A DNA stretch of 64,000 nucleotides. Source: Auanema rhodensis. Its lineage: Eukaryota; Animalia; Nematoda. The DNA is taken from assembly GCA_964057225.1 (NCBI GenBank), contig OZ059895.1, positions 12,028,001 to 12,092,000 of the forward strand, given 5' to 3'. Below are positions 1 through 54,733 of the stretch, piece after piece. Positions within the stretch are counted from its first letter, which is position 1. The number at the start of each line of letters is the position of its first letter. A program made the translations under genes and the position numbers. The notes under the pieces were generated by a model. The model saw nothing but the letters and a program-made list of their open reading frames with translations, was not told the origin of the DNA and ran no database searches.

Positions 1-2000
1 ATTTTCAATTTTATCTCTTCCGTAACAAAAGTTTTCAATTTTCCAGAAGTTTTACTTAGATAGCTCAACCCAAGGCATTAAAATATCTTCAATCTTATTT
101 CTATATTACAGTTATAAACCAGTAGTTTATGAACCTTCATCTTAACTTTACTGTTTCTATCTATTTCCTATTGAAACAAACATTGTTTAAACACTATACA
201 ACTGTGAAACCTTTTTTAATTTATTGTATTTGGAGCTCATAAGATTCAATATCATCGAGGGATTTAGATGTAACGTGGAAAATTACATAACTAACATGAA
301 ATTGGAAAAAAAACAATAACGAGGATAAGTATGTAAATCATTGAATATCAGATATTTCCGCCTACGACCATACCACGTTGAAAGTACGCCATGCAGCTGA
401 TTTTCAATTTTATCTCTTCCGTAACAAATGTTTTCAATTTTCCAGCAGTTTTACTTAGATAGCTCAACCCAAGGCATTAAAATATCTTCAATCTTATTTC
501 TTTATTACAGTTATAAACCAGTAGTTTATGAACCTTCATCTTAACTTTACTGTTTCTATCTATTTCCTATTAAAACAAACGTTGTTTAAACACTATACAA
601 CTGTGAAACCTTTTTTAATTTATTGTATTTGGAGCTCATAAGATTCAATATCATCGAGGGATTTAGATGTAACGTGGAAAATTACATAACTAACATGAAA
701 TTGGAAAAAAAACAATAACGAGGATAAGTATGTAAATCATTGAATATCAGATATTTCCGCTTACGACCATACCACGTTGAAAGTACGCCATGCAGCTGAT
801 TTTCAATTTTATCTCTTCCGTAACAAATGTTTTCAATTTTCCAGCAGTTTTACTTAGATAGCTCAACCCAAGGCATCAAAATATCTTCAATCTTATTTCT
901 TTATTACAGTTATAAACCAGTAGTTTATGAACCTTCATCTTAACTTTACTGTTTCTATCTATTTCCCATTAAAACAAACGTTGTTTAAACACTATACAAC
1001 TGTGAAACCTTTTTTAATTTATTGTATTTGGAGCTCATAAGATTCAATATCATCGAGGGATTTAGATGTAACGTGGAAAATTACATAACTAACATGAAAT
1101 TGGAAAAAAAACAATAACGAGGATAAGTATGTAAATCATTGAATATCAGATATTTCCGCTTACGACCATACCACGTTGAAAGTACGCCATGCAGCTGATT
1201 TTCAATTTTATCTCTTCCGTAACAAATGTTTTCAATTTTCCAGCAGTTTTACTTAGATAGCTCAACCCAAGGCATCAAAATATCTTCAATCTTATTTCTT
1301 TATTACAGTTATAAACCAGTAGTTTATGAACCTTCATCTTAACTTTACTGTTTCTATCTATTTCCTATTAAAACAAACGTTGTTTAAACACTATACAACT
1401 GTGAAACCTTTTTTAATTTATTGTATTTGGAGCTCATAAGATTCAATATCATCGAGGGATTTAGATGTAACGTGGAAAATTACATAACTAACATGAAATT
1501 GGAAAAAAAACAATAACGAGGATAAATATGTAAATCATTGAATATCAGATATTTTCGCTTACGACCATACCACGTTGAAAGAACGCCATCCCGTCCGATC
1601 TGGCAAGTCAAGCAACGTTGGGCCCGGTTAGTACTTGGATCGGAGACAGCTTGGGAATCCCGGGTGCCGTAAGCTTTTCAAATTTTTTTAACGATCATAC
1701 CACGTTGAAAGTACGCCATGCAGCTGATTTTCAATTTTATCTCTTCCGTAACAAATGTTTTCAATTTTCCAGCAGTTTTACTTAGATAGCTCAACCCAAG
1801 CCATTAAAATATCTTCAATCTTATTTCTATATTACAGTTATAAACCAGTAGTTTATGAACCTTCATCTTAACTTTACTGTTTCTATCTATTTCCTATTGA
1901 AACAAACATTGTTTAAACACTATACAACTGTGAAACCTTTTTTAATTTATTGTATTTGGATCTCATAAGATTTGATATCATCGAGGGATTTAGATGTTAC
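1..2000 (+). repeat. 5S rDNA tandem array, segment 1 (three 399-bp deleted units starting at 360, 759 and 1158, then one full unit)
   Basis: Exact 399-bp periodicity; 5S 5' end GCTTACGACCATACCACGTTGAAAGTACGCCAT followed directly by spacer. Confidence 0.95.
1557..1675 (+). rRNA. 5S rRNA (variant)
   Basis: 119-nt nematode-type 5S, followed by TTTT Pol III terminator. Confidence 0.93.
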
Positions 2001-2339
2001 TGTTCCATACGTGTCTTATAAAGAAGGCGGTTGACAACGTCAACCGACTTTTGGTTAATAGAATTCAATAAGAAACTAGACCTGAACTACTTTTTGTATA
2101 AATTCAATTATATTTGTAATTAATATTTTGCTATATAAACCCCTGAGAAAGCAACTAGGTTGGCTTTCTCATAACATGTAGTTTCATTTATTTGATTATT
2201 GTATTTTGCTTTTATAATTGTATTTCCATATTCTGAATAAACTTCTTTTTCTCTACTCTCTGTTACTTTTACAATGGCATTCACACTATTAAAGTCCATA
2301 TGGTTACCTAGCCGGAACCCTAGGAACCAATATGGAACG
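2001..2339 (+). repeat. 5' LTR of element 1 (TGTTCCATA...TATGGAACG)
   Basis: Direct repeat of 13414-13752; TATATAAA near 2132, AATAAA near 2236. Confidence 0.96.
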
Positions 2340-2358
2340 TGGAGGTTCCACCGAGATT
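2340..2358 (+). promoter_or_regulatory. Primer binding site complementary to tRNA-Gln 3' end
   Basis: TGGAGGTTCCACCGAGATT directly after the LTR is the complement of ...AATCTCGGTGGAACCT-CCA of eukaryotic tRNA-Gln. Confidence 0.88.
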
Positions 2359-3471
2359 CGTCTATAAGGGACGAATCTCTATGGACCATTGCCGCTACTT
2401 TTCTCACCTTTAAATTACTTTCTCTTTCTTTGAAATCCTTTTTACTCTAAAAATTTATCTTGATTTCATATCCAAAAATTCTAATTAAATTTTATATTTC
2501 AAACTTTCAAGTCAATTTTGTATCTAAAACAAAAACTCCAATTTAATCTAGTAATTCGAATTTATCTCTAAATATCATTCTTCTAACATCATTTCTGATA
2601 TATCTATTTGAAAAAAAAAATGTCTTATACATATTATCTATTACAATCTATATTCCTACTTTATTCCTCTACTTTCCTGTATGTTAAAGGCATAGAATGT
2701 ATAAAAAACTCTTTTTGGAACAAGCATATCAAAATATTTAACCACGAATAATATTAAAAACTATCAATTCATGAAATATCTTAAAGACATTTATTCATAT
2801 TGCAACACTTACCCATAAGTCATCTTGAAAACATCTTATCACAAGCTAAATTTTGAAAATATCTATTCATAAATCATTCTGAAAACATTGATTCATAAAC
2901 AAAACCACTATTCTTGATATCTAACGCATTTTTATGAGAAAGCCCCGTAAGAAACAATACCAGACATTCTCGGGACATCGCGCGGAGGCGTACACTTTTT
3001 GATATAAGACGCGCAATCATTTGAAATTAACCCTTTTGGTCCCATATGTGAATTAATGAATATTTTGAAGTTGAGTGGTCCCACCTAGCAAGACCCAGGG
3101 GAACAGAAGTAACGTTAAAAGGGAACGTCTTTTGGGGGTTTGCTTAGGTAAGAGAAGTCTGGAAAAGTGAGTATGAGAAGCCTGTGTACCTGATCTTGTC
3201 CATGACTGAAAAGGAGCAATACACAGACCACTGTCTCATATCTCATGCCTCTTCGAGAGATAAGAACTTGGTCCTTTGCTAAAGGTCACACGTAGTTGCG
3301 GACTCGTGTATGAACCTGACCAGGCTATTCTCCGACTAGAGACCCGCTGCAGGCTGGCCCCCTGACAGGAACAGGAGTCGCGCATACCAACCCCATATTG
3401 TCTCTTACGTTTTGTATAATATAAGCTCAGTCTTCGTTGGTTAATAATTTCCTTCCAGGAAACCAACAAAG

Positions 3472-5119
3472 ATGGCTGACGCAGCGAATCAAAATCCTCC
3501 GCCGGGAAATATTGCCCAAAATGCTACGAATAGCGCAGAGAAAACTCAGACAGTGGAAGCAGCACTGCATAGAAACCAAAGAAAAAATGGACCACCGGAT
3601 GCATTCCGACCAGATGCGAAATATCCGAAAACGAACGCGAAATCAAAGAAATTACCCCCTATTCCGGGTACACCGCTAACTGCTAAGAAACTTTATACTA
3701 CTGCTATTAAAACTACTAGGCATGCAATTAGCTTGAATAAGAATAAAACATCATCCAGTAAATCTACGCCCAAACGCTCTTCTCACTCTCCAAAAACAGT
3801 TGTTAATACCGGCACTAACACTTGTCCTCCAAATCACACTTCTCCTCAACGCCTTGTTCAAACCGCAAATGCGGAAATCCTCACCTCTCCTATTCCTAGA
3901 AACTCTCCCTCTTCCACTGATCAATCTTTGCACGGGCACTCTCTGTCTCCTGTCTCTTCTTCGTCAGACAATAACGTAAATTTGACTTCGAATGTTACAG
4001 AGCAGAGAAGTCGCCCTCAAATGGCAGAGCAGATGGAGCAAGACAACTCTCCTATTGCAAGAGCCCACAACGTTTCTATTCGCCATCACAAACCTACGCT
4101 TTATGATGGATTGGTTCCATTCAACCTCTACATGCAAAGACTAGAAGGATATTTCGATGCCCTTCAAGTCCCTATTGCCGAGAGACTTTCCCATCTCTAT
4201 CTACTTCTCGGAACGGATAGAGCCGCTGAAGCTCTTCGAACTATACCAGCAGAAGACTTACGCCAGGGATGGAACCACGTCAAACGCATACTATCGGAGA
4301 AATTACAACCTCCAGAAAAGAGAGATGCAGCATTCACAAAACTATGCAGCATTCACAAAACTCACTCATTTGAAACAAGGAGAGCACGAAACGGTACAAA
4401 ATTTCGCTCAACGCTGCAGAAACCTTGCCTATGAATCATGCAACATGGACTCGACAGCCGATGAAAGAATACTACGAGTTTCATTCTTAGGAGGACTACG
4501 AAAGACTTTAAGAACACATGTCAATAACCGCAGCCCTATCACCTTTGATGCAGCCGTGACTATTGCCGAAACTGTGGAAACTGACGAGGATCCTTCGCTC
4601 TTGGTCAACAACTTGATTAAAGACGTGGAACAACTAGAGATTAATAATGGTCTCATAAACCACATGAGAGCATCACAACAGGAGAAAATCTATGACGGAT
4701 CACAAACACACCAATCAAGAACATTCTATGGAAATCAATCAAGACCACAACAACCACAAGAGCAATGGAATCAAAGAAGAGGAGGATACCGCTCACCAAG
4801 ATACCAAGAGGATCGACAAAATAACCGTCACAACTTCAGACAGGATAACAGAAACAATGGATATCAACAAGGATACAACAATATCGTAGCCCCCAACGGT
4901 ACGATAGATACAATGATCGATACAACAGCAGAGGAAACGATCGATATGATAGCAGAAGGAATGATCGACAGGAGCACAGAGGAAACGACCGATACAACCG
5001 CGGAAACTGTCCTGATCGCGGATTTCAACAACGAAATCGCAGCACTTCATATGGACCACATAACAGGCACAGAGATCGCACAAGAAGCCCCAGCGTCCGT
5101 TTTCACGTTAACAAAGTAG
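3472..5119 (+). pseudogene. gag: gag (basic Ser/Pro-rich N-terminal extension, capsid, Arg/Gln/Asn-rich NC-like region), frameshifted in this copy
   Basis: ORFs 3472-4434 and 4157-5119 join when one copy of the 19-bp tandem duplication ATGCAGCATTCACAAAACT (~4325-4362) is removed; capsid-like motifs PTLYDG...YMQRLEGYF and LKQGEHETVQNFAQR. Confidence 0.8.
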
Positions 5120-5145
5120 AAAAGGAAACAATCAAAACAAAGAAG

Positions 5146-8034
5146 ACACTTCCGTTCATACCGCTATTCTTATCCGTCATCGCCCTATCTATGATACCTT
5201 GCCAGGCAGACAACACCTATCAACTCTGCATTGGCAAACGAGGAGGTATTTTCCTCGAACCACCTCGCCCAACCACCTGCTCAGACTATGCACACAAGGA
5301 CGGAGTCGAGATAAAAACAGTGGAACTATTCGCAGAAAATATGAATTACAAGGAATGGGAAGCATGGAAATGCGCCAAGGAAATCTATAAAACGTGCGCC
5401 CACGACTTATTCTTCATCAGGGAAAATAACGTTACATTACTCCGAATAGAACCAGCCACTCCACAAGAATGCCAAACAGTCATTCAAGAAAGACGACACA
5501 TGGATAACGACCTCAATCGCGAAGCACCAGGACTATTCAAAGCCCCTATGCCATCTAGTACACAATCAAAATCGTTTTGGGCATCCTCTTGCACAACCAA
5601 GTCAAGATTCACCTTAGAAAGAGGAATGATGACTAGCCTACACGATGACACTATAATCTCCGACTTATTCATCAACACTGAAGGATGTACTAAGCAACAA
5701 GGAGTATGCAACACCACCAACGCAGTTATCACATGGATCCCACCCAATGATCATCGAAATTGCGACTACACGACATTAGGGAAATTCGAAGCACTAATCA
5801 ACAATGATACTGTATTAATCTCGGAAATACAAGGAGCATTCATTCTCAAAAACAACACGCCAGACCCTACAGCTACAAGATGTATGAATACAAGCATCTA
5901 CTCAACTGATAGTGGTACGTACATTTCCATCAAGGACTTAAAAACACACCGACGTCAAAAGAGGATGGCACCCCAAGAATACCCTACGAGATTCTTCAAT
6001 ATCACTATCTACAAATCACTTCGCCTCACAGACAGTTCTACAGGTATACTACCTATGTACCAGACATATCGAAATAGGAAAAGACTGGACAACGCTTATA
6101 ACCTTATGGAATATCTCAAGACATCTAGCGTACACATAGGTTTCATCAAATTCCTACAACTAGATTCATCAAAACTGAAGAACCGACTCTTATGGCACAA
6201 CTACACTGACATCAACATGGTTATCCTGCACACACTTGCAGAAGCTGAGATTCGACTTTCTACGAAAATTGCCATCGAACACCTACTGCCATCAGAGATC
6301 ACGGCAAAACTCAGCAAGCAAATCACTATCAGCGACTTTGCCACACGTCTACTCAACTACGAAGGCGATTATCTCGACCGAGCAAGACAAATAGCAATTG
6401 AAATAGCTCACACACCTACAACTCTGGCAACAGGAGAGACTATTTCATCAATGGAGGACTATCTGTACCAACTGTACGCACCCAGGATGACAAAACTGCC
6501 TAGATCACGCACTGACACACAGTTCTACACCCAGATGGATCAAATACAGGAGTTTCTTGATTATCTAGAGCAAAACAATCGTCTAACTCGGATATCAAAA
6601 GAACAAAGAGAGACAGAAAATAAGAAATGGGCAGATCTCACAAAACAGGCAAATTCGTCAGCAATCGTCTTTCCCAACTATACCCTCATCTTCAACGGAC
6701 ACGCACAAAATTATGGGTTGCCCAAAAATCAACCTACAATCAGACCTATCACGGATGAAGACAGCAAATTATTTCAACAAGCATATCTTCAGCTCATTGA
6801 GTCACCTGGTGCTAGCCCCACAACCACCACTACTACAACCACCACAACCACTACATCGACTACCACAACAACTGCCCCGACAACTACTGCTCATCGGACG
6901 TCTCCACCTCAACCTACAACTACACCAAGGAGATATTATTATTACCAGAGTACAACAACTCCAGTAACTCCACCACCACGTCCTCTCACCACCACACCCC
7001 GCAGGGAATCTACTAGGACACTTCCAACAACTCGGACTACTACAAAGCGAGCAACAACGACCCAACCGATTGAGGAAATCAAATCTCACACTGGATCACA
7101 AGCACACCTCAATTTCCTACGAACACGAGCAGATATCATTCAAAAATACGACGATCAACTTCGTCAACAAGATACAAGGTCCCACCTCCAATACTCTACG
7201 TCAAAACTAGAGGAGGAAATCTTACAATCTTTCCAAATAACAAAGAAAAGCGTATGCAGAATGCAAAATAAGCAGCTACTTACCTGGTGGGCTATCCTGC
7301 AGATTAATCCGACTATAGGAATTCGCACTATGCTTCGTCGACAGGATATTTCAGCAAAGTTTGTTGGAGAACATCTTATTTACGTCATGCCATGCACCCC
7401 TGTAGAAGTAACACGTGTATACTCGGATCACAAACGAGACGATAAATGTTACCTGGAGACACCGGTAGACACGGAACATCACGGAAAACTCTTCATCACA
7501 CCAGGATCAAGAGATTTAACACCATATGCCCACATCATAGCATGCGATATGGCTACATCAGATCCCTACAGAGAAAACAATCAATGGATGAAAGATAATT
7601 CAACATTGAATGTGACTAACTTCTCATTTTCGGATGAACTCACATCTGTAAAAATTGATCACATTAAGTTTAACAATTCCAACATATTTTCAAACCTCAC
7701 GGAGTCAACATTTCCAATGGCACTGGCTATTTCCTACGGCTCTAGCCTAGCATCTTTACAAGCAACTATGCCAGGAAAATTGAAACCAGTCTTCAAACAT
7801 TCTGGACTATCCAATCTGAATCCAATAGGAATTATAGGAGGAACAGTTGGAACGACATTAATGATAGCAGATAACATATCAAACAACGCGGAGAAACAAA
7901 TCACAAATTTCTTTGGATACATAGGAGAATCAATTACAGCATGGATACTAAGGACACTAGCTATTATTGGAGCAATCATCGTCACAATAGGACTCATAAC
8001 TGTTACCATTTGGGCATTAAAAATATATGCATGT
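5146..8034 (+). other. env: Envelope glycoprotein region (signal peptide, rhabdovirus G / herpesvirus gB-like ectodomain, furin site, mucin stretch, TM)
   Basis: Hydrophobic LPFIPLFLSVIALSMIPCQA; WKC..IYKTC...P.TPQEC; RRQKR at 5950-5964; Thr-rich 6817-7065; VCRMQNKQL...INPT...ISAKFVG...PCTPV...CY..PV; TM 7939-8034. Confidence 0.82.
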
Positions 8035-11000
8035 ACCACAAGGATACCAATCAATCAAATCACATTCAACGAACAAGACGAAGAACCAAGAGGAGAGGAC
8101 AAACAATTCGAATTAAAACCACTAGTCACTTCTCAGCAAGAGAAATTATATACAAGAACCTCTCGATATGATCCTGACGCCCCACTATCAGATAATGACT
8201 TTTTCGCCTATCTACCACGGTACGCTATGAAAGAATCAAGGATTAACTACATCGGAGGATCACGACTACCTTTCGTACCTCTCTCCATTCACAATCAGAT
8301 CTTTACTGCTTTATGGGACACAGGAGCTTCTATATCATACATGAAGGAAAGTACATTTCAACAACTACCGGCAGCAACAATGGTTATGGAAAAGACAACA
8401 GCCATTGTAGCAAACAAATCACGATTTTCTTTCCTGGGCTACACAAGAATCCCAATTATTATCGGAAAGACAGAAATCGAGCACAAAGTACTGATTTCTG
8501 CCAACAACCACTGCCCAGCACCAATATTATTAGGAATAGACTTCATAGAAGCTCTCAACAAAATAGGAATAAATACATCTTTACGACCACTACAAAATTC
8601 ACTACTAATTGGAGACACAATAGTACCTTTAGCACAAGACTACGCGCCATGGACTGAGAACCACACGATAGCACACGTCGTAAGCCTGGAAACCAAACAG
8701 TTCTACCCAGGAGAAACCAGATCGCTTACATTGGAAGTAGACGATCCCGCCTCTTACGAACAAGCTTTCATTAGAAGCTCACAGCGGACAGGAAAAATGA
8801 GTTTCGCCCCTACTACTTTCACCCCAACGGGATATGGAGTTCAGATATTTGCTACAAATATCTCTCCAGACACAATTGTAGTACAGACAAATCAAGGCAT
8901 TGGAACAGCTTACGCTATCCCGAAAAACACGGAGGAGCAAAAAGGACAATATGTGCCACCAGAAGCAAGATGGGAAGATCAACTACCATACTTCCCAGAG
9001 GACTTTATAAAAGACCTCGATGTAACAAACACCATCTTTACTCAGCTAGAGAGACAACAGTTAAAGAAAATAGTGCTCAGAAACAAGGAAGCTTTCTTAA
9101 ACGAGGATCGCAATATTGGACTTTTCAAAGGACCAGTGGAACATAGCATCCCGATCATCGAAGGAAAAGTTCCATCTTTCAAGATCACGTACAGAATACC
9201 TCTATCACAACAAGAAGAAGTAGAAAAACAAGTGGAGGAAATGTTAGAACAAGGAATAATTGAGCCATCTTTCTCTATGACTACCAGTCCCGTAATATTG
9301 GTCAAGAAAAAGGATAAAACGTACAGATTTGTGACTGATTTTCGAGCACTCAACGCAATAACGCAAAAACAAATCTACGTTATATCTAACATTCAAGACA
9401 TCTTGGACCTAGCAGCCGGAGCGCGTATTTTCAGTAACTTTGATCTAGTATCTGGATTCTTTCAAATCCCTCTTAGATCAGAAGATAGACACCTCACCGC
9501 ATTCACTACTACGAGCGGAACTTATCAATACTGCAGAATGCCGATGGGACTCTGCGGAGCTCCACACACATTCCAAAATGCTGTACGATATTTACAACAA
9601 CACGTACGATGCAAGCTCTTCGTCTATCTCGACGATCTACTTCTCATATCGGAATCAACGACGAAACATTCACAAGATATCGACGAAGTACTGAACGCAT
9701 CAGCAGAGCTAGGATTAAAAATCAAGCTTAAGAAATGTACCTTTGGACAACAAGAAGTCAAATTCCTAGGATTCATTGTTGGACACGAAGGAATAAAACC
9801 AGACCCTCAGAAAGTAAAAGCAATCCAAGATTATCCAAGACCGAAATCAATAACAGGAGTTCGAGCATTTATGGGAGTTGTGAACTACTTTCGCAGATTT
9901 ATTAGAAATGCCGCAGGCATTGCGTCACCACTTTATGAGCTCACGAAAAAGGATACAGCTTTCAAATGGGGAGATGCAGAAGAACAAGCATTTCAACAAC
10001 TTAAACAGATACTCTGTCAAGCTCCTGTACTACAAGCACCTATAGCAAAACGACCTTACGTCATTGAAAGCGATGGAAGTATAATTGCAGTTGGCGCAGT
10101 ACTATTACAGGCTAAAGACGACAAGGAACCACTTCACCCAATTGCATTTGCCAGCCGAAAACTGAACAAAGCCGAACGGAATTACCCGCCAATTGAAATC
10201 GAAGCCCTAGCACTCACTTTCGCAGTACATCAATTTCGGACTTACATACTAGGCACACCAATAAGAATCATTACCGATCACAGGCCTCTTACTAGCCTCA
10301 TGACAAGAAAAGATCTCATTGGCAGGCTAGCAAAATTTCAAATCGTATTACAAGAATACGACATCGAGATAGTGTATCGCCCAGGACGTCTTAACAGCGT
10401 CTGTGATGCACTTTCACGATATTTTGAAGACGAAGTCAACGAAGCCAAGGAAAGAAAGAAGAAACCAAAAGAAACTCCTACACACAAAATCTCGACTATT
10501 TCAACTATTACGGACCTTCGGACCATTCAAGGCAATACAGAATGGATCATGGAAACAAAAGAAAAGATTCGGAACAAAACAGCAGGAAGGCAACTAATGG
10601 ATCGATATATCGTTGTGAACGACGCTCTGTATGCAAAACCCAAAACAGCTTTACAAACTCCGCGAGCCATTCTACCAAACGATCCAGCAATCACAATACC
10701 AATTATAGAAAAATTTCATAAGGACCCAATTCTCGGAGCGCATCTAGGAATCAATAAGACGCAAGACTCCATTTTGCGACGGTACACTTGGACAGGAATA
10801 CAGGATGATATCACAAGATATGTGAACAGATGTCTCGGATGTGCAAAGAGGAAAAATAACCCACATGAAGCCACAGTTGAACCAATGAGAAACTTCCCAA
10901 CAGTGACACATCCATGGGAACGAGTTCACATGGACATACTTGGACCACTAACTCGGACCGCAAATGATAAAAGATACATTTTATCAATACAAGACGCTTT

Positions 11001-12330
11001 TTCAAAATGGATCATAGCGATACCGCTCATTCGTCAAACATCAGAAGAAATAGTATCAGCTATTATGACACACTTATTCTATGTCTTCGGACCCCCAAAG
11101 AAAATCATCACAGACAATGGATCAAACTTTGTCTCACACGAATTCAAAAACATGTGTGATGATCTTGGATCGGAACATCACACAACTATGCCATACTACA
11201 AAAACGCAAATGGTCAAGTGGAACGGCTACACAGAACACTGGAAGAAGCATTAACTTCCTACGTTAATGACGATCAAGACAATTGGGATATCATTCTACC
11301 AAAAATTGTTTTTACGATGAATCGACTACCAAACGCTACTACTCGCACACCACCCTACGACTGTCTGTTTGGACAAACAGCTCGGTTACCAATAGATAAG
11401 GACTTAGAAACTCCAGGAGCCACAATCAAGAACGCCCCGGACTTACACGAGAAGATTCATGAAAGGATAGAGTTGAATAATGAAAGAATGAAGAAGAAAT
11501 ACGACGAAAATCACAGGACGCAGGAAAGAGAGATCTTCGTGGAAAATAGAGCACTCGTCAAGCGAGCAAAGCCAGCAAATAAATTACAAACAACAAGCGA
11601 TGGACCATATATAATCAAGGAAATAAAAGGAAATAACGTAATATTAGCAGATAGCGAAGGGAATACGATTATAGCTCACAAGAATAATATAAGATACTTT
11701 CCACCCGACGATAACAACGTCGAAGAAAGCGAGCACAACAGAAACGACTCCGCACCTGCCATTTATAGCGACGGCTCACAGCAGGATACGGAAAATACGC
11801 GCGCTAAAAATAGCACGCCCACCGCAACATCAATCTCTGATTCAGAAAGCGACAACGAGGACGAATTCTACGAACAAAGCCGACCTTCAATAACACCACA
11901 AGAAACAATAGCACCACAGGAAATTACGCGGGAAACACAACAGGACAATTATCAACCAGAAACCGGACCGAATACGGCAGACAAGTCAGCTACGGACAAG
12001 GACGAAAACAACTTATTTCAACAACTTGTCGATAAAATTGGAGAAGAAACAAGGCAAGAGCTCTATGAAGAAAGACGTAAAGAGATACCCACAACCAAAA
12101 GATGGAGCTCAGCCCTCAAGTTGGCACTTGGAATAGAAGACAAAAATCCTATAACCGCTCCAAAACCATTCCACGTACCAATAAGGTACAACAGCGTGAT
12201 ACCCACCTTAGAGTCTAAAAACAGGCTCACACGCTCTCAGATACCGGATGCTCATTTCAATTCTCCAAAAACACCGGTTGTACGAAAGAAACGACCTTCA
12301 ACAGTGATTGGAGCAACAACAACCATTTAA
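5191..12330 (+). CDS. pol: Env-Pol polyprotein: class III-like glycoprotein, TM, protease, RT, RNase H, integrase, C-terminal tail (frame is open from 4825)
   Basis: LWDTGAS (~8311), YLDD (~9625), ESDGS RNase H, H-H-C-C zinc finger, HMD / TDNGSNF / VERLHR integrase, GPY motif; Cys-rich N-terminal ectodomain with furin site and TM. Confidence 0.95.
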   Translation: MIPCQADNTYQLCIGKRGGIFLEPPRPTTCSDYAHKDGVEIKTVELFAENMNYKEWEAWKCAKEIYKTCAHDLFFIRENNVTLLRIEPATPQECQTVIQERRHMDNDLNREAPGLFKAPMPSSTQSKSFWASSCTTKSRFTLERGMMTSLHDDTIISDLFINTEGCTKQQGVCNTTNAVITWIPPNDHRNCDYTTLGKFEALINNDTVLISEIQGAFILKNNTPDPTATRCMNTSIYSTDSGTYISIKDLKTHRRQKRMAPQEYPTRFFNITIYKSLRLTDSSTGILPMYQTYRNRKRLDNAYNLMEYLKTSSVHIGFIKFLQLDSSKLKNRLLWHNYTDINMVILHTLAEAEIRLSTKIAIEHLLPSEITAKLSKQITISDFATRLLNYEGDYLDRARQIAIEIAHTPTTLATGETISSMEDYLYQLYAPRMTKLPRSRTDTQFYTQMDQIQEFLDYLEQNNRLTRISKEQRETENKKWADLTKQANSSAIVFPNYTLIFNGHAQNYGLPKNQPTIRPITDEDSKLFQQAYLQLIESPGASPTTTTTTTTTTTTSTTTTTAPTTTAHRTSPPQPTTTPRRYYYYQSTTTPVTPPPRPLTTTPRRESTRTLPTTRTTTKRATTTQPIEEIKSHTGSQAHLNFLRTRADIIQKYDDQLRQQDTRSHLQYSTSKLEEEILQSFQITKKSVCRMQNKQLLTWWAILQINPTIGIRTMLRRQDISAKFVGEHLIYVMPCTPVEVTRVYSDHKRDDKCYLETPVDTEHHGKLFITPGSRDLTPYAHIIACDMATSDPYRENNQWMKDNSTLNVTNFSFSDELTSVKIDHIKFNNSNIFSNLTESTFPMALAISYGSSLASLQATMPGKLKPVFKHSGLSNLNPIGIIGGTVGTTLMIADNISNNAEKQITNFFGYIGESITAWILRTLAIIGAIIVTIGLITVTIWALKIYACTTRIPINQITFNEQDEEPRGEDKQFELKPLVTSQQEKLYTRTSRYDPDAPLSDNDFFAYLPRYAMKESRINYIGGSRLPFVPLSIHNQIFTALWDTGASISYMKESTFQQLPAATMVMEKTTAIVANKSRFSFLGYTRIPIIIGKTEIEHKVLISANNHCPAPILLGIDFIEALNKIGINTSLRPLQNSLLIGDTIVPLAQDYAPWTENHTIAHVVSLETKQFYPGETRSLTLEVDDPASYEQAFIRSSQRTGKMSFAPTTFTPTGYGVQIFATNISPDTIVVQTNQGIGTAYAIPKNTEEQKGQYVPPEARWEDQLPYFPEDFIKDLDVTNTIFTQLERQQLKKIVLRNKEAFLNEDRNIGLFKGPVEHSIPIIEGKVPSFKITYRIPLSQQEEVEKQVEEMLEQGIIEPSFSMTTSPVILVKKKDKTYRFVTDFRALNAITQKQIYVISNIQDILDLAAGARIFSNFDLVSGFFQIPLRSEDRHLTAFTTTSGTYQYCRMPMGLCGAPHTFQNAVRYLQQHVRCKLFVYLDDLLLISESTTKHSQDIDEVLNASAELGLKIKLKKCTFGQQEVKFLGFIVGHEGIKPDPQKVKAIQDYPRPKSITGVRAFMGVVNYFRRFIRNAAGIASPLYELTKKDTAFKWGDAEEQAFQQLKQILCQAPVLQAPIAKRPYVIESDGSIIAVGAVLLQAKDDKEPLHPIAFASRKLNKAERNYPPIEIEALALTFAVHQFRTYILGTPIRIITDHRPLTSLMTRKDLIGRLAKFQIVLQEYDIEIVYRPGRLNSVCDALSRYFEDEVNEAKERKKKPKETPTHKISTISTITDLRTIQGNTEWIMETKEKIRNKTAGRQLMDRYIVVNDALYAKPKTALQTPRAILPNDPAITIPIIEKFHKDPILGAHLGINKTQDSILRRYTWTGIQDDITRYVNRCLGCAKRKNNPHEATVEPMRNFPTVTHPWERVHMDILGPLTRTANDKRYILSIQDAFSKWIIAIPLIRQTSEEIVSAIMTHLFYVFGPPKKIITDNGSNFVSHEFKNMCDDLGSEHHTTMPYYKNANGQVERLHRTLEEALTSYVNDDQDNWDIILPKIVFTMNRLPNATTRTPPYDCLFGQTARLPIDKDLETPGATIKNAPDLHEKIHERIELNNERMKKKYDENHRTQEREIFVENRALVKRAKPANKLQTTSDGPYIIKEIKGNNVILADSEGNTIIAHKNNIRYFPPDDNNVEESEHNRNDSAPAIYSDGSQQDTENTRAKNSTPTATSISDSESDNEDEFYEQSRPSITPQETIAPQEITRETQQDNYQPETGPNTADKSATDKDENNLFQQLVDKIGEETRQELYEERRKEIPTTKRWSSALKLALGIEDKNPITAPKPFHVPIRYNSVIPTLESKNRLTRSQIPDAHFNSPKTPVVRKKRPSTVIGATTTI

Positions 12331-12555
12331 TCAAAAATAGAAACTTTTTTTTGGGAAAATAACTTTATTCATTAATTTTTTTTTTTATTAATTTATAATA
12401 ATTCATTCTATCTGCTACCCAAACAACAAAAACAATGTTTTCCCCAATCATCAATCTTAATATCTATGTATCACAAAATATATACTTACCTATTTTTTTC
12501 ACCCTATATAAGCTCAAAATTCACCTCAAGCAGAAAAACTCCCAGCACCACAAGA

Positions 12556-13191
12556 ATGGCACTCGTCTTCCCTCCACCAGCCTGCGAGACACCTATCGCG
12601 ATGATCAAGGAAAAGTGGATCAAGATTCATTCGCTCCAGATAGAACTACAACAACTGGAGACAACAAACAACAGGACTAAAAAGATAAGAATTCTCCAAT
12701 CATTTTCGGAGAATTTAGCCAGAGTTACTCTATTAATAGAGACTCTGGAAAGGTTACAATGTTCATGTAACAATGATGAAGAAGAGATGGCCAAAATGGC
12801 GCAAAACTGGTCCGAGGCCACTGCCCGCACCAAGGCCACCATCAACAAACTACGCGAAGATCTAGGCTATCCAGCCTCCGAAAATGTAGCTAGCGCGGAT
12901 CTCATCCCAAGATGGGCCGCGGAAGAGATCCACAAGAGCTGGACAGAAGAAAGTATGATGGAATCGACTAACCAGTCGATTAGGAAGGCGGGAGACCTGA
13001 TCAGCCAGGCCTTAAGGATACTAATGGCGACGCGCGCCACCACTCCGGACCAGAAAAGAAAGAAAATGATGATAGCAGGCCAGGCGACGGAACTGCTGAC
13101 AGACGTCAGCCTGTTCCACATATGGACGGTCGCCGACCGGCAACCCGCGACCGACTTCCAGCTGGGACAAATCGAGGAGGAAGAAGGATAA
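12556..13191 (+). CDS. Accessory ORF of element 1, ~211 aa predicted helical protein of unknown function (frame open from 12466)
   Basis: Intact ORF between pol and the 3' LTR; aligns along its length with 20500-21102 of element 2. Confidence 0.85.
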   Translation: MALVFPPPACETPIAMIKEKWIKIHSLQIELQQLETTNNRTKKIRILQSFSENLARVTLLIETLERLQCSCNNDEEEMAKMAQNWSEATARTKATINKLREDLGYPASENVASADLIPRWAAEEIHKSWTEESMMESTNQSIRKAGDLISQALRILMATRATTPDQKRKKMMIAGQATELLTDVSLFHIWTVADRQPATDFQLGQIEEEEG

Positions 13192-13413
13192 CAGCTGCAC
13201 GAGGTGAATTCATAGTTTTTCTTTTCTTCTCTTTTCTTTTCTTTTCTTTTTATATTGTTTTCATTTTTTTAATATTATTCCTATTACACTATTATTCCTA
13301 TTCTAGTATTCTAATTCTAATTCATTTATATATATATTTTTCTCTTTTGTTTCTTTTCCTTAAAAGGTCTAATTTCTTATAGCTGAGGTCAGCTACTTTT
13401 TCAATATAAGGCA

Positions 13414-13752
13414 TGTTCCATACGTGTCTTATAAAGAAGGCGGTTGACAACGTCAACCGACTTTTGGTTAATAGAATTCAATAAGAAACTAGACCTGAAC
13501 TACTTTTTGTATAAATTCAATTATATTTGTAATTAATATTTTGCTATATAAACCCCTGAGAAAGCAACTAGGTTGGCTTTCTCATAACATGTAGTTTCAT
13601 TTATTTGATTATTGTATTTTGCTTTTATAATTGTATTTCCATATTCTGAATAAACTTCTTTTTCTCTACTCTCTGTTACTTTTACAATGGCATTCACACT
13701 ATTAAAGTCCATATGGTTACCTAGCCGGAACCCTAGGAACCAATATGGAACG
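13414..13752 (+). repeat. 3' LTR of element 1
   Basis: Direct repeat of 2001-2339. Confidence 0.96.
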
Positions 13753-50239: not shown

Positions 50240-53200
50240 GGCCAAAGCTCTTTGACATGTCGCGCTATGACATGTTGTGTACATGACATAGTAAAATTGA
50301 AAAAGGCGTTATGACATGGGTTTATTTTGGTCTTCGTTATCTTAACGACATACCCTTTTTTGACATTGTCGTCTACTTGACATGTATATTCAAATTATTC
50401 TAGAAGTTTCTCTGGAATTTTTGAAGTTTTTGCTTTATCTACTAAATTATGTAAAACTGTTTTTATTTGTGGGATTAAGTTGAACAATGTCATTTGAAGA
50501 GCAAAATAATATAAGCTGTCAGACAAGTTAAGTAAAGTGCATCAAACATGTAATTTATACTAAATATTCTTAATAATTGAAACTGGGGGGAAACCAGAAA
50601 ATAGAAGAATCGTTGTTTTGTATCGATCTCGATATTGTTTCAAATTGTGGTGCTGAAGATTCTCTTTCTTCGACGTCTGTTGATTCATCTGAAGAATGGT
50701 GTTGATCGCTAAACAAGATTTCTGGAAAATCATCGTCTTCTTCTGGTTCTTCGTCTTCTTTTTCATTTTGACAAATTCCATCTTCAACTTCTCTATTTTT
50801 TTTTTCTTTGGCAACATAGTTGATAAGAACAACATCGTCATCTCCGCTCTCTTCGTTCGATGTAAGATTTTCCGTAGAATTCAAAAACGATATTCTAAAA
50901 TATTAAATAATCATAGTTTTGAATTCAAACTCAACTCTGTCTGTGCTATTTTCCTGGTATGATTTCCTTTTGAGAATTGGCGTCCTTTTCGTTTTTGATA
51001 TTTAGACCCATCACTGGATTTTATCTGTTTACTAAGATAATTTTGAGCTGTTCTATTATTTTTTCTTGCTTCCATTTCTCTTATAAGTTGATCAGATGTT
51101 GAAGAATTGAGAGTACGCAATACAGCAAACCTTTAAGTGTTGATGTGTCTAAATTTGTTTTGTTGAACTAACGAATGAATACAAAAATAGTAGCTATAGT
51201 TGATTGATGCTAAGCAGTCTTTATGGAAGCATTTGAATTGGTATTCCGTTTGTTTTACACACACTGGTCTTAAAAAATGAATTCGAATCATATTCGCAAC
51301 AAGGTATTCATACTTTCTCAAATCATTTTCATTCAAAATGAAAAACAAGTTCTTGTTATTCATGCATATATTTACATGAAGTGTCTCGGACGCTTCTAAA
51401 AAAACAGTACAGTTCACACTACCGTCACCTAGAATATTAAATTTTACAAAACTTTGTATATTTCCTAAAAAATACCTTCTATAGTCCAACGGGGAAAAGA
51501 CAAAAAATTCAAGGAAATAAAATAGTGTTGAAGCCCAAATGACTCCATGTATTGCTTCTGTTCGTCTCTTGTCATATTATCGAAAACAAATTCCACTGGT
51601 TTCAGAACTTTTAAGTGCTGACTAGTGTTTCTAATAGCAAAAATTCGTTCGTCCATGTCTTCTATTGAGATTTAGAAACATATAAATGTTAATTTGGTTA
51701 ACTCACGTTGATGAACAATCAACGAATTTTTCAGTAAGAGTTCCGCAGGTTGAGGATACAAAATTATTTTCTTTAATTGATTATTGCGCATTTCGATTAT
51801 ATTAGTGGTCGCCCATTGCAATGGACAACCAGCACTGAGCTTCTTCATCAATGAACACCTTTTGTAAAGCTCATGCGAATTTTTTAGTAGCCTAAATTTG
51901 AACAAGAAATGTTTACAGCATCAAACATGGCTTACCAATTACAAGTAATAGGGTGAAGTTCATCAGTTAACTTCAAAAGTTTTTTATCGAAATCTGATTT
52001 ATGCAAACATCCTAGAATTCCTGTATGCCAAATAACACCGGTGATATTCTGAACAAAAATTAATTTTTTGAGAATAGAAAACAACGAACTTCTTCTTTCC
52101 ATCCGAATAATTTTCTTTTAATAAATTCAGCGTTTTCGCGATCACTTTTATGCATATTTGTTTTTAAGTTTTCAAATTTATGAATATCACACCTAAGTGC
52201 AATTGATTTACCAAGAAATGATCCCTGAAGTTAAAAGTTAAAGCAATAATTTTGTGAATCTAACCGTGTTATACTGTTTGAGAGATTCTTCTCCATCTGT
52301 GATAATGCATGGCAGAACTTTGTTTTGTCCAAAACGTTCGAATTGATAATTCAACGCTGACGAAAAAGCTTCATGCTCAGCCGATGTTTTGAAAGTATGA
52401 ATCATGATCCCTAATAAAATGCTGGCACATTTTTCAGACGCCTTATTACTAAATAAAAACCTTCGATGAAATAACTTTTAGACTCACACAAAAACATCAT
52501 GTATTCCTATAACCATAGTCAAATATTCAGCGCTGCTAACACTAAATGTCGTATCCACTTGAATCATTGAACCCTGTTTAGGAATTAAGCCTGACCTATT
52601 AGTTGTTGAGATTAATTTATCTGAAACTATTGCTTTTTACAAATTATCGATTTGCCAAACTTAGTTCAATTTCTGCTTCTTCTTTCTCAAAACTTAAAAG
52701 CTTTTCAATATTTTTTCTATGAACCTCCACAGTTTTTGTTTCCGGTAGCGATGAACAAAAATGTTCTAACGCATGCGGATAGAAAACTATCTGTCTTATA
52801 GACACTCTACCATCATCTGAAGCATAGTTATTGAAAAATTTATAATCAATTAAACAACCTAAATTTTGTACATGAGGCGCTAACATTAGTTCCAGCGAGC
52901 TAGGCTTGCAAATAAACCTATCAAGGAGTTTAGCAATATTAGTGGCAGTTTTCTTTCCAACTCCTGATTTTACATGGGTTTCAACGTTACGTGAAATATT
53001 AACAAGCTTGAGATAAATAAATAAAAAGTAAAACCGGGATAATTAAAAACTTTTTTCGAAGCTATATTCAATCTTTGTTCCTCTAAATTTCGTTTAGCTC
53101 CTGAAGTTGTTCTGTGCTTCAATGCTTCCCTAGCTGCTAAAACTTCCGAAGGTTTTAGTCGTTTCGATTCATTTATTTCGACAGTGAGATTTTCCTGCAG

Positions 53201-54013
53201 AGAAGATAAAAAGCTGATAAACATAATTCAATGAAACAACTTCAGTAAAATAATCATATAAAATTGGTGTTACAACATTCTCATTTTCATCTAAAATATA
53301 GCAAACCTGTAAATCAATTTTGTATTAACCAAAGATGCAAACTATACTTACTTTCCGATGAAGAGAAGGGTATCTGGGATTAATGTTCAAAAAAATTTTT
53401 AGAACAAACATTGAATCTACAACTTTACACCATTTATCATCAAAATTTTCAACGCAAATACTAGATTTATTTGTTTTTAAAAAACGTAACTGTCCACCGT
53501 TTCCTAAAATGAGCATAAGTACGCATTCTACTGTTGAGTTCACACCTATTTTCCCTGTCCAAGGTGAGAAATGATCTGTAGTTGCGTCCCTGAGTAATTT
53601 AAAATTTTTTGAGTGAACTAAAAATACAGTGTTTCCAGCTAAGAAACGATTAAAACGAGGAAGTTCGTCATATACTTCCATATCACTAAATTACTTGAAT
53701 AACAGAAAAAAAACTAGAACTTACGTATCATTGAAATAGTGTAGGAGCGATATATTGGTGGAAGGCTTCATCACGAAAACTTAATCTTATTGAACTTGAA
53801 TTTAACAAAAAATAAAACAGAAAAAAAGTTTAGTAATAATTGAACAAAACATAATGAGCAAGAAAATATTTAAAAAATGGAATACGTGCCAAAACTGTAA
53901 TTTCAAATGATGATCGAGATGATCAAAAGAAGACCATGTCGAAACAACTTTTTCAATTTAAACATGTCAAGGAGACCATATGTCAAAGTTCCTCATGTCA
54001 TTCAGATTTCGCC
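50240..54013 (-). mobile_element. Mutator-like (MULE) DNA transposon inserted in a 5S gene
   Basis: 9-bp TSD CGTTGAAAG (50231-50239 / 54014-54022); imperfect TIRs GGCCAAAGCTCTTTGACATG vs GGCGAAATCTGAATGACATG (15/20); subterminal TGACAT repeats. Confidence 0.88.
50570..53771 (-). CDS. Multi-exon MULE DDE transposase with SWIM-like zinc finger and acidic tail (exon boundaries only partly resolved)
   Basis: Minus-strand motifs VDTTF (~52550), IITDGE (~52297), LRCDIH CxxH (~52187), TTNIIEMRNN (~51800), C-x4-C...C-x-H (~51200); first intron 53724-53686 joins ATG 53771 in frame to ORF 53325-53681. Confidence 0.75.
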
Positions 54014-54116
54014 CGTTGAAAGTACGCCATCCCGTCCGATCTGGCAAGTCAAGCAACGTTGGGCCCGGTTAGTGCTTGGATCGGAGACGGCTTGGGAATC
54101 CCGGGTGCCGTAAGCT
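54014..54116 (+). pseudogene. 3' part (+17..+119) of the 5S gene interrupted by the MULE (5' part at 50215-50239)
   Basis: The 5S sequence resumes exactly at the TSD. Confidence 0.92.
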
Positions 54117-54471
54117 TTTCAAATTTTTCTAACGATCATGCCACGTTGAAAGAACGCCATGCAGCTGATTTTCAATTTTATCTCTTCCGTAACAAATGTT
54201 TTCAATTTTCCAGCAGTTTTACTTAGATAGCTCAACTCAAGGCATCAAAATATCTTCAATCTTATTTCTTTATTACAGTTAAAAACCTGTAGTTTATGAA
54301 CCTTCATCTTAACTTCACTGTTTCTATCTATTTCCTATTAAAACAAACGTTGTTTAAATACTATACAACTGTGAAACCTTTTTTACTTTATTGTATTTGG
54401 AGCTCATAAGATTCAATATCATCGAGGGATTTAGATGTAACGTGGAAAATTACATAACTAACATGAAATTG

Positions 54472-54733
54472 TGTGGCGTTATACCGCAAGTGTATAGTAT
54501 GGTTGGAAATAAAACACAAAGCGAATATGTAGAAAAGGGTTTATTGATGAATTAACAAGACAAGCACGGAATAGAATCACTGACTGCGAACGTTAAAAAT
54601 GTAAGACTGTCCTCCGTTGTTGGGCGGTCGTCTGAAATAAACTGTTACTTATGCCACATGTTAACACATATGTTATGCATATGTGTTTTGATCTAGTTAC
54701 AAAGGAAGGAGATAAAGAGAGATAGAGATAGAT

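What the first reader, a model, noticed from the sequence alone, without database searches (positions are those of the whole stretch)
1997..54472. Three LTR elements from two superfamilies all insert 54-89 bp upstream of 5S +1
Seen: the element 1 TSD lies at -89..-86 (5S at 13842) and the element 2 TSD at -57..-54 (5S at 24107). The BEL/Pao element follows ...CATGAAATTG, i.e. -56 in unit coordinates, overlapping the element 2 site. All three fall in a ~36-bp window of a 400-530 bp unit (my rough estimate is a 1-2% chance if random). Both visible downstream genes are full-length copies. Known: Ty1, Ty3 and the Dictyostelium TRE5/DGLT-A elements target upstream of Pol III genes. Inference: convergent Pol III/TFIIIB-guided integration, or a chromatin hotspot beside the TFIIIB footprint, used by enveloped retroelements in an animal.
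Basis: partly seen in the sequence, partly recalled or inferred. Interest (0 to 1): 0.82.

Follow-up and report, generated by a model that had tools for sequence, protein, structure and literature searches.

The report
LTR elements clustered upstream of 5S genes
In a nematode 5S ribosomal RNA gene array, three recently inserted virus-like LTR elements from two unrelated families all sit 54-89 bases upstream of a 5S gene start, which hints at (but with only three cases does not prove) the kind of RNA-polymerase-III-guided integration so far known only from yeasts and slime moulds.

Summary
The window holds about 35 kb of a + strand 5S rDNA array with three LTR elements in it. E1 (2001-13752, + strand) is a Ty3/gypsy GAG-ENV-POL element with a gB-like envelope domain; its 4-bp duplication lies at -89..-86. 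E2 (19884-24049, minus strand) is a non-coding relative of E1; its duplication lies at -57..-54. E3 (54472 to beyond 64000, minus strand) is an Atlas-like BEL/Pao element with a phlebovirus-Gc-like envelope; its junction follows -56. LTR pairs are identical or differ at one base, so all three insertions are recent. Three random points fall this close in 1.2-3.4% of simulations. AT content, homology between element and unit, and selection on a single redundant unit do not explain the clustering. The sites lie about two and five helical turns upstream of a TATA-like box at -35..-22. This resembles Dictyostelium TRE5/NLTR-B more than Ty3. Three cases are too few to separate tethering to TFIIIB or Pol III from a chromatin or DNA-shape hotspot, or from chance. 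E1's integrase model lacks a Ty3-type chromodomain. A fourth, unreported insertion sits inside a 5S gene. Interest is moderate.

The parts
1..2000 (+). 5S rDNA array left of E1. It holds three 399-bp gene-less units and then a gene-bearing unit (5S gene 1557-1675). The last 4 bases are the left copy of the E1 duplication.
1997..2000 (.). E1 target-site duplication, left copy (TTAC)
2001..13752 (+). E1: 11,752-bp Ty3/gypsy (Metaviridae-like) LTR element with GAG-ENV-POL order, in the same orientation as the 5S genes
2001..2339 (+). E1 5' LTR (339 bp, TG...CG), 100% identical to the 3' LTR
2340..2360 (+). E1 primer-binding site; it starts with TGG directly after the LTR. E2 has the same site with one difference.
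3472..4434 (+). E1 ORF A (320 aa). It matches no family, but its first ~146 aa are conserved at protein level in E2, so it is a real coding region.
4157..5119 (+). E1 gag-like ORF (320 aa) in another frame, overlapping ORF A. It shows a weak match to the gag part of a Caenorhabditis relative.
5191..12330 (+). E1 env-pol ORF, 2379 aa without a stop. Domains by residue: gB-like class III fusion domain 664-974, protease 1027-1122, RT 1371-1530, RNase H 1593-1723, integrase 1837-2003, 376-aa tail.
11200..12327 (+). E1 integrase C-terminal part (aa 2004-2379). It comprises the end of the core, one SH3-like barrel, a disordered stretch, one long helix and a disordered end. No second small barrel is present.
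12466..13191 (+). E1 post-pol ORF D (241 aa, no family match); a homologue is kept open in E2
13414..13752 (+). E1 3' LTR
13753..13756 (.). E1 target-site duplication, right copy (TTAC), at -89..-86 of the next 5S gene
13807..13820 (+). TATA-like element at -35..-22 of the 5S gene downstream of E1; it is present in nearly all units
13842..13960 (+). Full-length 5S rRNA gene downstream of E1 (107.5 bits)
19880..19883 (.). E2 target-site duplication, left copy (TGGA)
19884..24049 (-). E2: 4,166-bp non-autonomous relative of E1, antiparallel to the 5S genes. The LTRs 19884-20296 and 23637-24049 are 412/413 identical. The primer-binding site is at 23614-23636. It lacks gag (most of it), env, protease, RT, RNase H and integrase through one large internal deletion relative to the E1 plan.
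20500..21102 (-). E2 open 200-aa homologue of E1 ORF D (29% identity)
24050..24053 (.). E2 target-site duplication, right copy (TGGA), at -57..-54 of the next 5S gene
24107..24225 (+). Full-length 5S rRNA gene downstream of E2 (100.7 bits)
50240..54014 (.). X: 3,775-bp non-LTR insertion inside a 5S gene. It is flanked by the 8-bp duplication GTTGAAAG (50232-50239 and 54015-54022, which is 5S +18..+25). It has subterminal TGACATG repeats and no recognisable transposase. It is not part of the -89..-54 cluster.
54472..64000 (-). E3: Atlas-like BEL/Pao (Belpaoviridae-like) LTR element, antiparallel to the 5S genes and cut by the window end. Its left junction follows unit position -56.
55700..63631 (-). 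E3 single ORF, 2643 aa without a stop. Domains by residue: gag (DUF1759) 187-318, RT 870-1000, Peptidase_A17 1053-1206, integrase zinc finger 1443-1494, DUF5641 1730-1826, phlebovirus Gc-like envelope 2148-2616.
63885..63905 (-). E3 primer-binding site (TGG..., 3 bases after the LTR end, read on the minus strand)
63909..64000 (-). The visible 92 bases of E3's other LTR (its 5' LTR), identical to 54472-54563. The inner edge of the LTR could not be fixed; a polypurine-like run lies at 55610-55628.

Best explanation
Three separate, recent integrase-mediated insertions landed in the zone directly upstream of the promoter complex of active 5S genes. E1 and E2 were integrated by a Ty3/gypsy gB-type integrase lineage, E3 by an Atlas-like BEL/Pao integrase.

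I take the clustering to be a real integration bias. In this reading the intasomes are guided to the upstream edge of the TFIIIB-bound, TATA-like promoter. The guide is either contact with the Pol III machinery or the sharp chromatin and DNA boundary that the machinery creates beside an A8-9 tract. The core promoter and the gene stay intact.

Shown here:
- the positions, the duplications and the youth of the insertions;
- the independence of the three events;
- the family assignments;
- the intact downstream genes.

Inferred: that the bias is real, and that it depends on the Pol III complex rather than on bare sequence. The split between direct tethering and a chromatin boundary is open, roughly even. 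The E1-type integrase would have a loose window (-54 to -89), not Ty3-like precision.
For: - Exact 4-bp duplications and matching empty sites in other units show clean integrase events.
- LTR pairs are 339/339, 412/413 and 92/92 identical, so there has been little time for selective sorting.
- All three lie within 36 bp of a 529-bp unit; the chance of this is 1.2-3.4%.
- E2 and E3 come from different superfamilies, yet their cuts lie 2-3 bp apart.
- The sites lie about 20 and 50 bp upstream of the TATA-like box at -35..-22. TFIIIB sits at -15..-32 on yeast tRNA genes (PMC8632968).
- Known Pol III-directed elements insert in the same range: TRE5 at 40-54 bp, NLTR-B at 39-64 bp (PMC5911963).
- AT content at the sites is ordinary for the spacer.
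- The elements share no homology with the unit.
- An insertion inside a 5S gene persists in the same array, so purifying selection on single units is weak.
- Four insertions lie in 34.8 kb of array.
- Both visible downstream genes are full length.
Against: - Only three events are available, and the probability was computed after the pattern was noticed.
- No copy outside the window was examined.
- E1 and E2 share integrase-recognition ends but lie 32 bp apart, so there is no fixed distance.
- Orientation is not uniform: one parallel, two antiparallel.
- The gene-less-unit control is uninformative.
- The E1 integrase model has one SH3-like barrel and no Ty3-type vestigial chromodomain. Its last ~160 aa have no relatives.
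- No tRNA or other Pol III gene is in the window to test generality.
- No report of Pol III targeting in any animal was found.
Confidence: 0.5

Rival explanations
1. Chance clustering in a tolerant target. The 5S array accumulates young insertions because hits in a redundant tandem array are harmless, whereas hits elsewhere in a gene-dense nematode genome are quickly lost. In this reading the closeness of the three sites within the unit is a coincidence that drew attention afterwards.
For: - A 1.2-3.4% event is not rare across many scanned windows.
- The fourth insertion, X, lies elsewhere, inside a gene.
- E1 and E2 share integrase-recognition ends yet are 32 bp apart.
- Orientation is mixed.
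- No integrase targeting domain was found.
Against: - The cuts of E2 and E3 lie 2-3 bp apart although they belong to different superfamilies. The joint probability with the third site within 33 bp is 0.5-1.1%.
- The zone coincides with the place predicted from known Pol III-directed elements.
Confidence: 0.33
2. A preference for sequence or DNA shape that does not depend on Pol III. Both integrases favour a local feature of the spacer, such as the junction of a flexible segment with an A-tract or a nucleosome-excluding A8-9 run. They would insert there whether or not a functional gene follows.
For: - Both neighbourhoods carry ATG-N8-AAAA, which occurs on the + strand only at -94 and -66 of the unit.
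- E2 and E3 cut at the edge of the A8-9 tract.
- The same sequence is present upstream of the gene-less units.
Against: - The motif was derived from the two sites themselves, and the cut offsets from it differ (5, 7 and 9 bases).
- The three duplicated sequences share no common motif.
- AT content is not distinctive.
- Other A/T-rich tracts in the spacer are unoccupied.
Confidence: 0.17

Closest known systems
Dictyostelid TRE5-A and NLTR-B (non-LTR) and DGLT-A (Ty3/gypsy) elements that integrate upstream of Pol III genes
   Same: They insert at a loose, characteristic distance upstream of Pol III genes, including 5S genes, and leave the gene intact. [quoted passage not shown] NLTR-B inserts at 39-64 bp and DGLT-A at 13-33 bp (PMC5911963). 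E2 and E3, at -54..-59, fall in or next to these ranges. Several unrelated element types converge on the same zone.
   Different: Those hosts are amoebae and this one is an animal. Two of those elements are non-LTR. E1 at -86..-89 lies outside their ranges. Their targeting rests on many copies and on assays; here there are three copies and no assay.
Ty3 (S. cerevisiae) and Tj1 (S. japonicus), Ty3/gypsy elements targeted to Pol III start sites
   Same: They share the superfamily of E1 and E2. The E1 integrase's best solved relative is Ty3 integrase in the intasome-TFIIIB complex 7q5b. Tj1 also hits 5S genes (PMC4600332).
   Different: Ty3 and Tj1 insert within about 1-12 bp of the start site, between the TFIIIB site and the gene. 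E1 and E2 lie 54-89 bp upstream of the start, beyond the TATA-like box. Ty3 contacts TBP and Brf1 through a C-terminal domain plus a vestigial chromodomain. The E1 model shows no second barrel. Tj1 has a fixed orientation; here orientation is mixed.
Ty1 (S. cerevisiae, Ty1/copia)
   Same: It has a broad window upstream of Pol III genes rather than a single site, which would accommodate -54 and -89 for one integrase lineage (PMC5911963).
   Different: It belongs to a different superfamily. Its targeting runs through an integrase contact with Pol III subunits, which could not be tested here.
Atlas viruses (nematode Belpaoviridae-like endogenous viruses; A. ceylanicum)
   Same: E3 has the same plan: gag, pol and a phlebovirus Gc-like envelope in a single reading frame. 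Its envelope's best solved relative is Atlas Gc, 7a4a, E=6e-21 (PMC9094657).
   Different: It is only 27-33% identical to the nearest database polyproteins. The Atlas papers say nothing about integration sites.
Nematode GAG-ENV-POL Ty3/gypsy elements with herpesvirus-gB-type envelope (Sacco et al. 2022; eLife 2026, PMC13524379)
   Same: E1 has the gB-like domain between gag and protease in the pol frame. Rhabditid relatives at 37-53% identity have the same domain set.
   Different: E1 is a new lineage from a host absent from the protein database. No target preference has been described for this group.
Sequence-specific rDNA elements (R1/R2 in 28S; Mutsu in 5S genes)
   Same: They reside in ribosomal RNA gene arrays (PMC10946416).
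   Different: Those elements cut one exact sequence inside the gene with their own endonuclease. E1, E2 and E3 are integrase-driven, lie in the spacer, and use three different target sequences.

Membership tests
Pol III-upstream-targeting retroelements (Ty3, Tj1, Ty1, DGLT-A, TRE5 type) | Insertions cluster at a characteristic distance upstream of Pol III transcription start sites | tested here: inconclusive
   3 of 3 LTR insertions lie at -89..-54 of a 5S start site, with a chance probability of 1.2-3.4%. There are only three, and the test was made after the pattern was seen.
Pol III-upstream-targeting retroelements (Ty3, Tj1, Ty1, DGLT-A, TRE5 type) | The association holds genome-wide and across Pol III gene classes (tRNA, U6, 5S) | not tested
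   The window has no tRNA or other Pol III gene. Fetching other copies of the elements was left out as barred.
Pol III-upstream-targeting retroelements (Ty3, Tj1, Ty1, DGLT-A, TRE5 type) | Targeting depends on a functional Pol III gene, not on the flanking sequence alone | tested here: inconclusive
   About 24 of 71 units keep the upstream sequence but lack the internal control region. E1 and E2 are both upstream of full genes, which is expected 44% of the time by chance. The unit downstream of E3 is outside the window.
Pol III-upstream-targeting retroelements (Ty3, Tj1, Ty1, DGLT-A, TRE5 type) | The target gene and its promoter are left intact | tested here: met
   The downstream genes score 107.5 and 100.7 bits, and the TATA-like box at -35..-22 is untouched.
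Pol III-upstream-targeting retroelements (Ty3, Tj1, Ty1, DGLT-A, TRE5 type) | An element protein physically contacts TFIIIB or Pol III | not testable with these tools
   No host TFIIIB or Pol III sequences and no complex prediction were available.
Ty3-type TFIIIB docking module | Integrase C-terminal domain followed by a vestigial chromodomain (tandem small beta-barrels) that binds TBP and Brf1 (PMC8632968) | tested here: not met
   The AlphaFold2 model of E1 aa 2004-2379 has one confident SH3-like barrel, then disorder, one helix and disorder. Pfam finds nothing in the tail.
Ty3/gypsy GAG-ENV-POL gB-type nematode elements (E1) | LTR pair, short target duplication and a primer-binding site next to the 5' LTR | tested here: met
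   Identical 339-bp LTRs, the 4-bp duplication TTAC, and a TGG... site directly after the LTR.
Ty3/gypsy GAG-ENV-POL gB-type nematode elements (E1) | Protease, RT, RNase H, integrase in that order, with a gB-like class III fusion domain upstream of protease | tested here: met
   Pfam hits in that order within one 2379-aa ORF. There are weak PDB hits to herpesvirus gB. Relatives carry the same domain set. The arrangement is described in PMC13524379.
Atlas-like BEL/Pao elements (E3) | BEL/Pao pol markers (Peptidase_A17, DUF1759 gag, DUF5641) and a phlebovirus Gc-like envelope in the same frame | tested here: met
   Pfam hits. The best solved relative is Atlas Gc, 7a4a. The relatives are nematode BEL/Pao polyproteins.
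Atlas-like BEL/Pao elements (E3) | Complete LTR pair with a target-site duplication | not testable with these tools
   Only 92 bases of the second LTR are in the window. The right junction lies beyond 64000.
Sequence-specific rDNA insertion elements (R1/R2/Mutsu type) | All copies occupy one exact nucleotide position defined by a target sequence | tested here: not met
   E1 and E2 are 32 bp apart, and the three duplicated sequences differ.

The most novel reading that the evidence does not exclude
Two unrelated lineages of envelope-bearing LTR retroelements in a rhabditid nematode have each evolved integration guided by the Pol III (5S) pre-initiation complex. One lineage is a gB-type Ty3/gypsy element and the other an Atlas-like BEL/Pao element. 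This would be the first such targeting in an animal and the first in the BEL/Pao superfamily, achieved without a Ty3-type chromodomain.
Probability: 0.2. Interest if true: 0.85.

Novelty: new variant of a known kind. Interest (0 to 1): 0.55.

Why it matters
Targeting of retroelements to the upstream flank of Pol III genes is the textbook 'safe haven' strategy. The review read here lists it only for yeasts and dictyostelids (PMC5911963). A 2024 review of transposable elements in rDNA reports 5S-spacer insertions in animals only for fish (PMC10946416).

A nematode case involving two superfamilies would have three consequences:
- It would extend the strategy to animals.
- It would show convergence in lineages that carry viral fusion proteins.
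- It would give a natural system for asking how an intasome reads a Pol III promoter, because the array holds units with and without the gene behind the same upstream sequence.

If the clustering is chance, the window is still a clean record of three young, apparently undamaged nematode endogenous virus-like elements and of a transposon inside a 5S gene.

Tried and rejected
- **AT-richness as the cause.** A 21-bp sliding AT content at the sites is 0.75-0.80, within the spacer's range of 0.6-0.87. Rejected.
- **Recombination through shared sequence.** Sensitive BLAST of the unit against the LTRs, E3's left 1.2 kb and X gave only matches of 21 bp or less, expected by chance. Rejected. The clean duplications also argue for integrase.
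- **A shared target motif.** ATG-N8-AAAA marks both neighbourhoods. It was derived after the fact and the cut offsets differ, so it is kept only as a weak rival.
- **A known domain in the E1 integrase tail.** Pfam at E<=1 found nothing. A search of 1.84 billion representatives showed that only the first ~170-215 aa are shared with other integrases. The AlphaFold2 model shows no chromodomain-like barrel.
- **Coding capacity of X.** None of seven ORFs has a transposase domain.
- **Inner edge of the E3 LTR.** It could not be fixed from 92 shared bases.
- **Literature.** No report of Pol III- or 5S-directed LTR elements in nematodes or other animals was found. The Atlas and gB-type papers do not treat target sites. 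Sacco et al. 2022 is not held in the library.
- **Host species.** The nearest polyproteins are only 27-53% identical and come from Auanema, Caenorhabditis, Diploscapter, Heterorhabditis and Haemonchus. The host is a rhabditid nematode, but the species is unknown.

Full report
**What the window is.** Rfam finds 47 matches to 5S rRNA, all on the + strand, and no other RNA family. ARAGORN finds no tRNA. The array is made of 529-531-bp units that carry a gene and 399-bp units that do not. A BLAST of one unit against the window leaves four blocks that are not 5S DNA. After refinement these are 2001-13752, 19884-24049, 50240-54014 and 54472-64000. Array DNA amounts to 34,778 bases.

**The unit.** Each gene-bearing unit has the 119-base gene, a T-run, and 21 bases later a partial direct copy of 5S +10..+34. 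The 399-bp units have lost the 130 bases between the two copies. They keep the whole upstream region and the first ~34 bases of the gene but lack the internal control region. About 24 of 71 units are of this kind. Upstream of +1 nearly every unit has a TATA-like element at -35..-22 and an A8-9 tract at -54..-47.

**Checking the observation.**
- E1 has two 339-bp LTRs, identical at 339 of 339 positions, with ends TG...CG. It is flanked by TTAC at 1997-2000 and 13753-13756. The primer-binding site begins with TGG at the base after the LTR, and the related E2 ends the same way. This settles the one-base ambiguity in favour of a 4-bp duplication. With the next gene at 13842, the duplication is at -89..-86.
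- E2 has 413-bp LTRs that differ at one position and is flanked by TGGA at 19880-19883 and 24050-24053. That is -57..-54 of the gene at 24107.
- E3 begins at 54472 directly after ...CATGAAATTG, so the last flank base is unit position -56. Its first 92 bases recur at 63909-64000. The rest of that LTR, the right junction and the duplication lie beyond the window.
- Uninterrupted units carry exactly the sequences expected for the empty sites, and the flanks of each element belong to one unit variant.
- Both visible downstream genes are full length.

**Chance.** Simulation of three random points gives a span of 33-36 bp or less in the following shares:
- 1.2-1.4% for a circular 529-bp unit;
- 1.9-2.2% if only the 410-bp spacer is a target;
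- 2.9-3.4% for a 330-bp target.

Requiring in addition that two points lie within 3 bp gives 0.5-1.1%. These figures were computed after the pattern had been noticed, in a scan of many windows, so they overstate the evidence.

**What the elements are.**

*E1 (+ strand).* It carries a 2379-aa reading frame without a stop. The frame holds, in order, a gB-like or Monjiviricetes-type class III fusion domain, protease, RT, RNase H and integrase. Upstream lie a gag-like ORF and an overlapping ORF A; downstream lies a 241-aa ORF D. There is one frame change between ORF A and the gag-like ORF and one between gag and env-pol. Whether these are programmed cannot be told from the sequence. The nearest polyproteins are 37-53% identical, come from Auanema, several Caenorhabditis species, Diploscapter and Heterorhabditis, and have the same domain set. 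This GAG-ENV-POL arrangement with a gB-type envelope is already described for nematode Ty3/gypsy elements (PMC13524379).

*E2 (minus strand).* It is a relative of E1, with 74-89% DNA identity over the LTR ends, primer-binding site and leader. It has no gag core, env, protease, RT, RNase H or integrase, through one large internal deletion relative to the E1 plan. It keeps protein-level similarity to three regions of E1: the start of ORF A, the last ~100 aa of pol, and ORF D, whose homologue is still an open 200-aa frame. It must have been integrated by an E1-type integrase supplied in trans.

*E3 (minus strand).* It has a single 2643-aa frame without a stop. The frame holds a BEL/Pao gag, RT, Peptidase_A17, integrase, DUF5641 and a phlebovirus Gc-like envelope. 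The envelope's best solved relative is the Gc of Atlas virus from a hookworm, 7a4a, E=6e-21 (PMC9094657). The nearest polyproteins are 27-33% identical and come from Haemonchus and Caenorhabditis.

The host is therefore a rhabditid nematode that is not represented in the protein database. The window is not human. 'Two superfamilies' is right. 'Enveloped' applies to E1 and E3 only. E1 is parallel to the 5S genes; E2 and E3 are antiparallel.

**Simple explanations tested.**
- Base composition does not single out the zone. AT content at the sites is 0.75-0.80, and much of the spacer is as rich or richer.
- The elements share no sequence with the unit that could have mediated recombination, and the duplications are those of integrase events.
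- Selection against other positions is an unlikely filter. The LTR pairs are identical or nearly so, each unit is one of dozens of redundant copies, and a 3.8-kb insertion inside a 5S gene persists in the same array.
- The three duplicated sequences (TTAC, TGGA and a site ending ATTG) have nothing in common.
- Both neighbourhoods do contain ATG-N8-AAAA, which occurs on the + strand only at -94 and -66. I derived that motif from the sites themselves, and the cuts lie 5, 7 and 9 bases from it.

**Relation to the Pol III promoter.** The TATA-like box at -35..-22 matches the place where TFIIIB binds (-15..-32 on a yeast tRNA gene; PMC8632968). E2 and E3 lie about two helical turns upstream of it, at the edge of the A-tract. 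E1 lies three turns further. Known Pol III-directed elements insert as follows (PMC5911963; PMC4600332):
- 1-12 bp upstream: Ty3, Tj1 and the Yarrowia elements;
- 13-33 bp: DGLT-A;
- 37-54 bp: TRE5;
- 39-64 bp: NLTR-B;
- over a broad window: Ty1.

E2 and E3 thus resemble the dictyostelid non-LTR elements in position, not Ty3. All three insertions leave the promoter and gene intact.

**Integrase.** The E1 integrase's best solved relative is Ty3 integrase in the intasome-TFIIIB complex 7q5b, matched from the N-terminal domain into the C-terminal domain. Ty3 docks on TBP and Brf1 through its C-terminal domain plus a vestigial chromodomain. In E1:
- the first ~170-215 residues after the catalytic core are shared with thousands of integrases;
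- the last ~160 residues have no relatives;
- Pfam finds nothing in the tail;
- an AlphaFold2 model built on 46 sequences (mean pLDDT 69.8) shows one confident SH3-like barrel, then disorder, one long helix and disorder.

The Ty3-type docking module is therefore absent. This argues against homology with the Ty3 mechanism but not against tethering by another surface.

**The internal control.** Gene-less units offer the same upstream sequence without a functional gene. E1 and E2 are both upstream of full genes, but that is expected 44% of the time ((47/71) squared). The unit after E3 is not visible. The control is a good design for more data and says nothing yet.

**Verdict.** I consider a real integration bias towards the upstream edge of the 5S promoter complex the best explanation, at about 0.5. 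That figure splits roughly evenly between contact with TFIIIB or Pol III and a chromatin or DNA boundary created by the complex and the A-tract. Chance in a tolerant array stands at about 0.33. A Pol III-independent sequence or shape preference stands at about 0.17. Convergent Pol III tethering in both families is the most novel reading, at about 0.2. No paper found here reports Pol III- or 5S-directed LTR elements in an animal.

I did not look up, fetch or pattern-search other genomic copies or solo LTRs of E1, E2 or E3, or loci of their relatives in other nematodes. I also left out a scan of metagenome contigs with a host-spacer pattern meant to catch further junctions, because I could not tell whether that falls under the same bar.

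2. Scripts printed the outer bounds of similarity segments between E2 and E1. The place of E2's internal deletion can be inferred from them. I do not repeat those bounds here.

Noticed in passing
window 50215-54116 (element 50240-54014): A 3,775-bp non-LTR insertion sits inside a 5S gene, flanked by an 8-bp duplication GTTGAAAG (5S +18..+25). Its ends read GGCC.../...GCCC, it has many subterminal TGACATG motifs, and no transposase domain was found. It is probably a non-autonomous DNA transposon. A 2024 review states that no TE insertion within a 5S gene had been reported (PMC10946416), although its own table lists Mutsu in zebrafish 5S.
   Followed up: partly
window, every unit, e.g. 14902-15432 compared with 18081-18479: Each gene-bearing unit carries a partial direct copy of 5S +10..+34 placed 21 bp after the gene. 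About 24 of 71 units are 399-bp units that lost the 130 bp between the two copies. They keep the promoter-proximal sequence but have no gene body. The units form higher-order repeats of 529+531, 529+399 and 529+399+399 bp.
   Followed up: partly
window 19884-24049 (E2) compared with 2001-13752 (E1): E2 keeps the leader, the start of ORF A, the end of pol and an open homologue of the post-pol ORF D. This is the layout expected of a copy made from a spliced subgenomic RNA, as for the Cer1 CERV mRNA (PMC10309623).
   Followed up: no
window 12466-13191 (+) and 20500-21102 (-): The post-pol ORF D (241 aa in E1, 200 aa in E2) is only 29% identical between the two elements, yet it is open in both and matches no family. 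It is a conserved accessory gene of unknown function.
   Followed up: partly
window 54683-54890: A long GA/GATA-rich microsatellite lies inside the left LTR region of E3.
   Followed up: no
window 4808-5005: The 3' part of the E1 gag-like ORF contains 24-bp periodic repeats that encode a low-complexity, N/Q/R-rich stretch.
   Followed up: no
window 54116-54472: X and E3 lie in the same unit, only about 460 bp apart. The 5S gene upstream of E3 is the one split by X.
   Followed up: no
unit positions -94 and -66 (e.g. 25602 and 25630): ATG-N8-AAAA occurs on the + strand only at the two insertion neighbourhoods, 28 bp apart. It may be an old internal duplication or a chance resemblance.
   Followed up: partly
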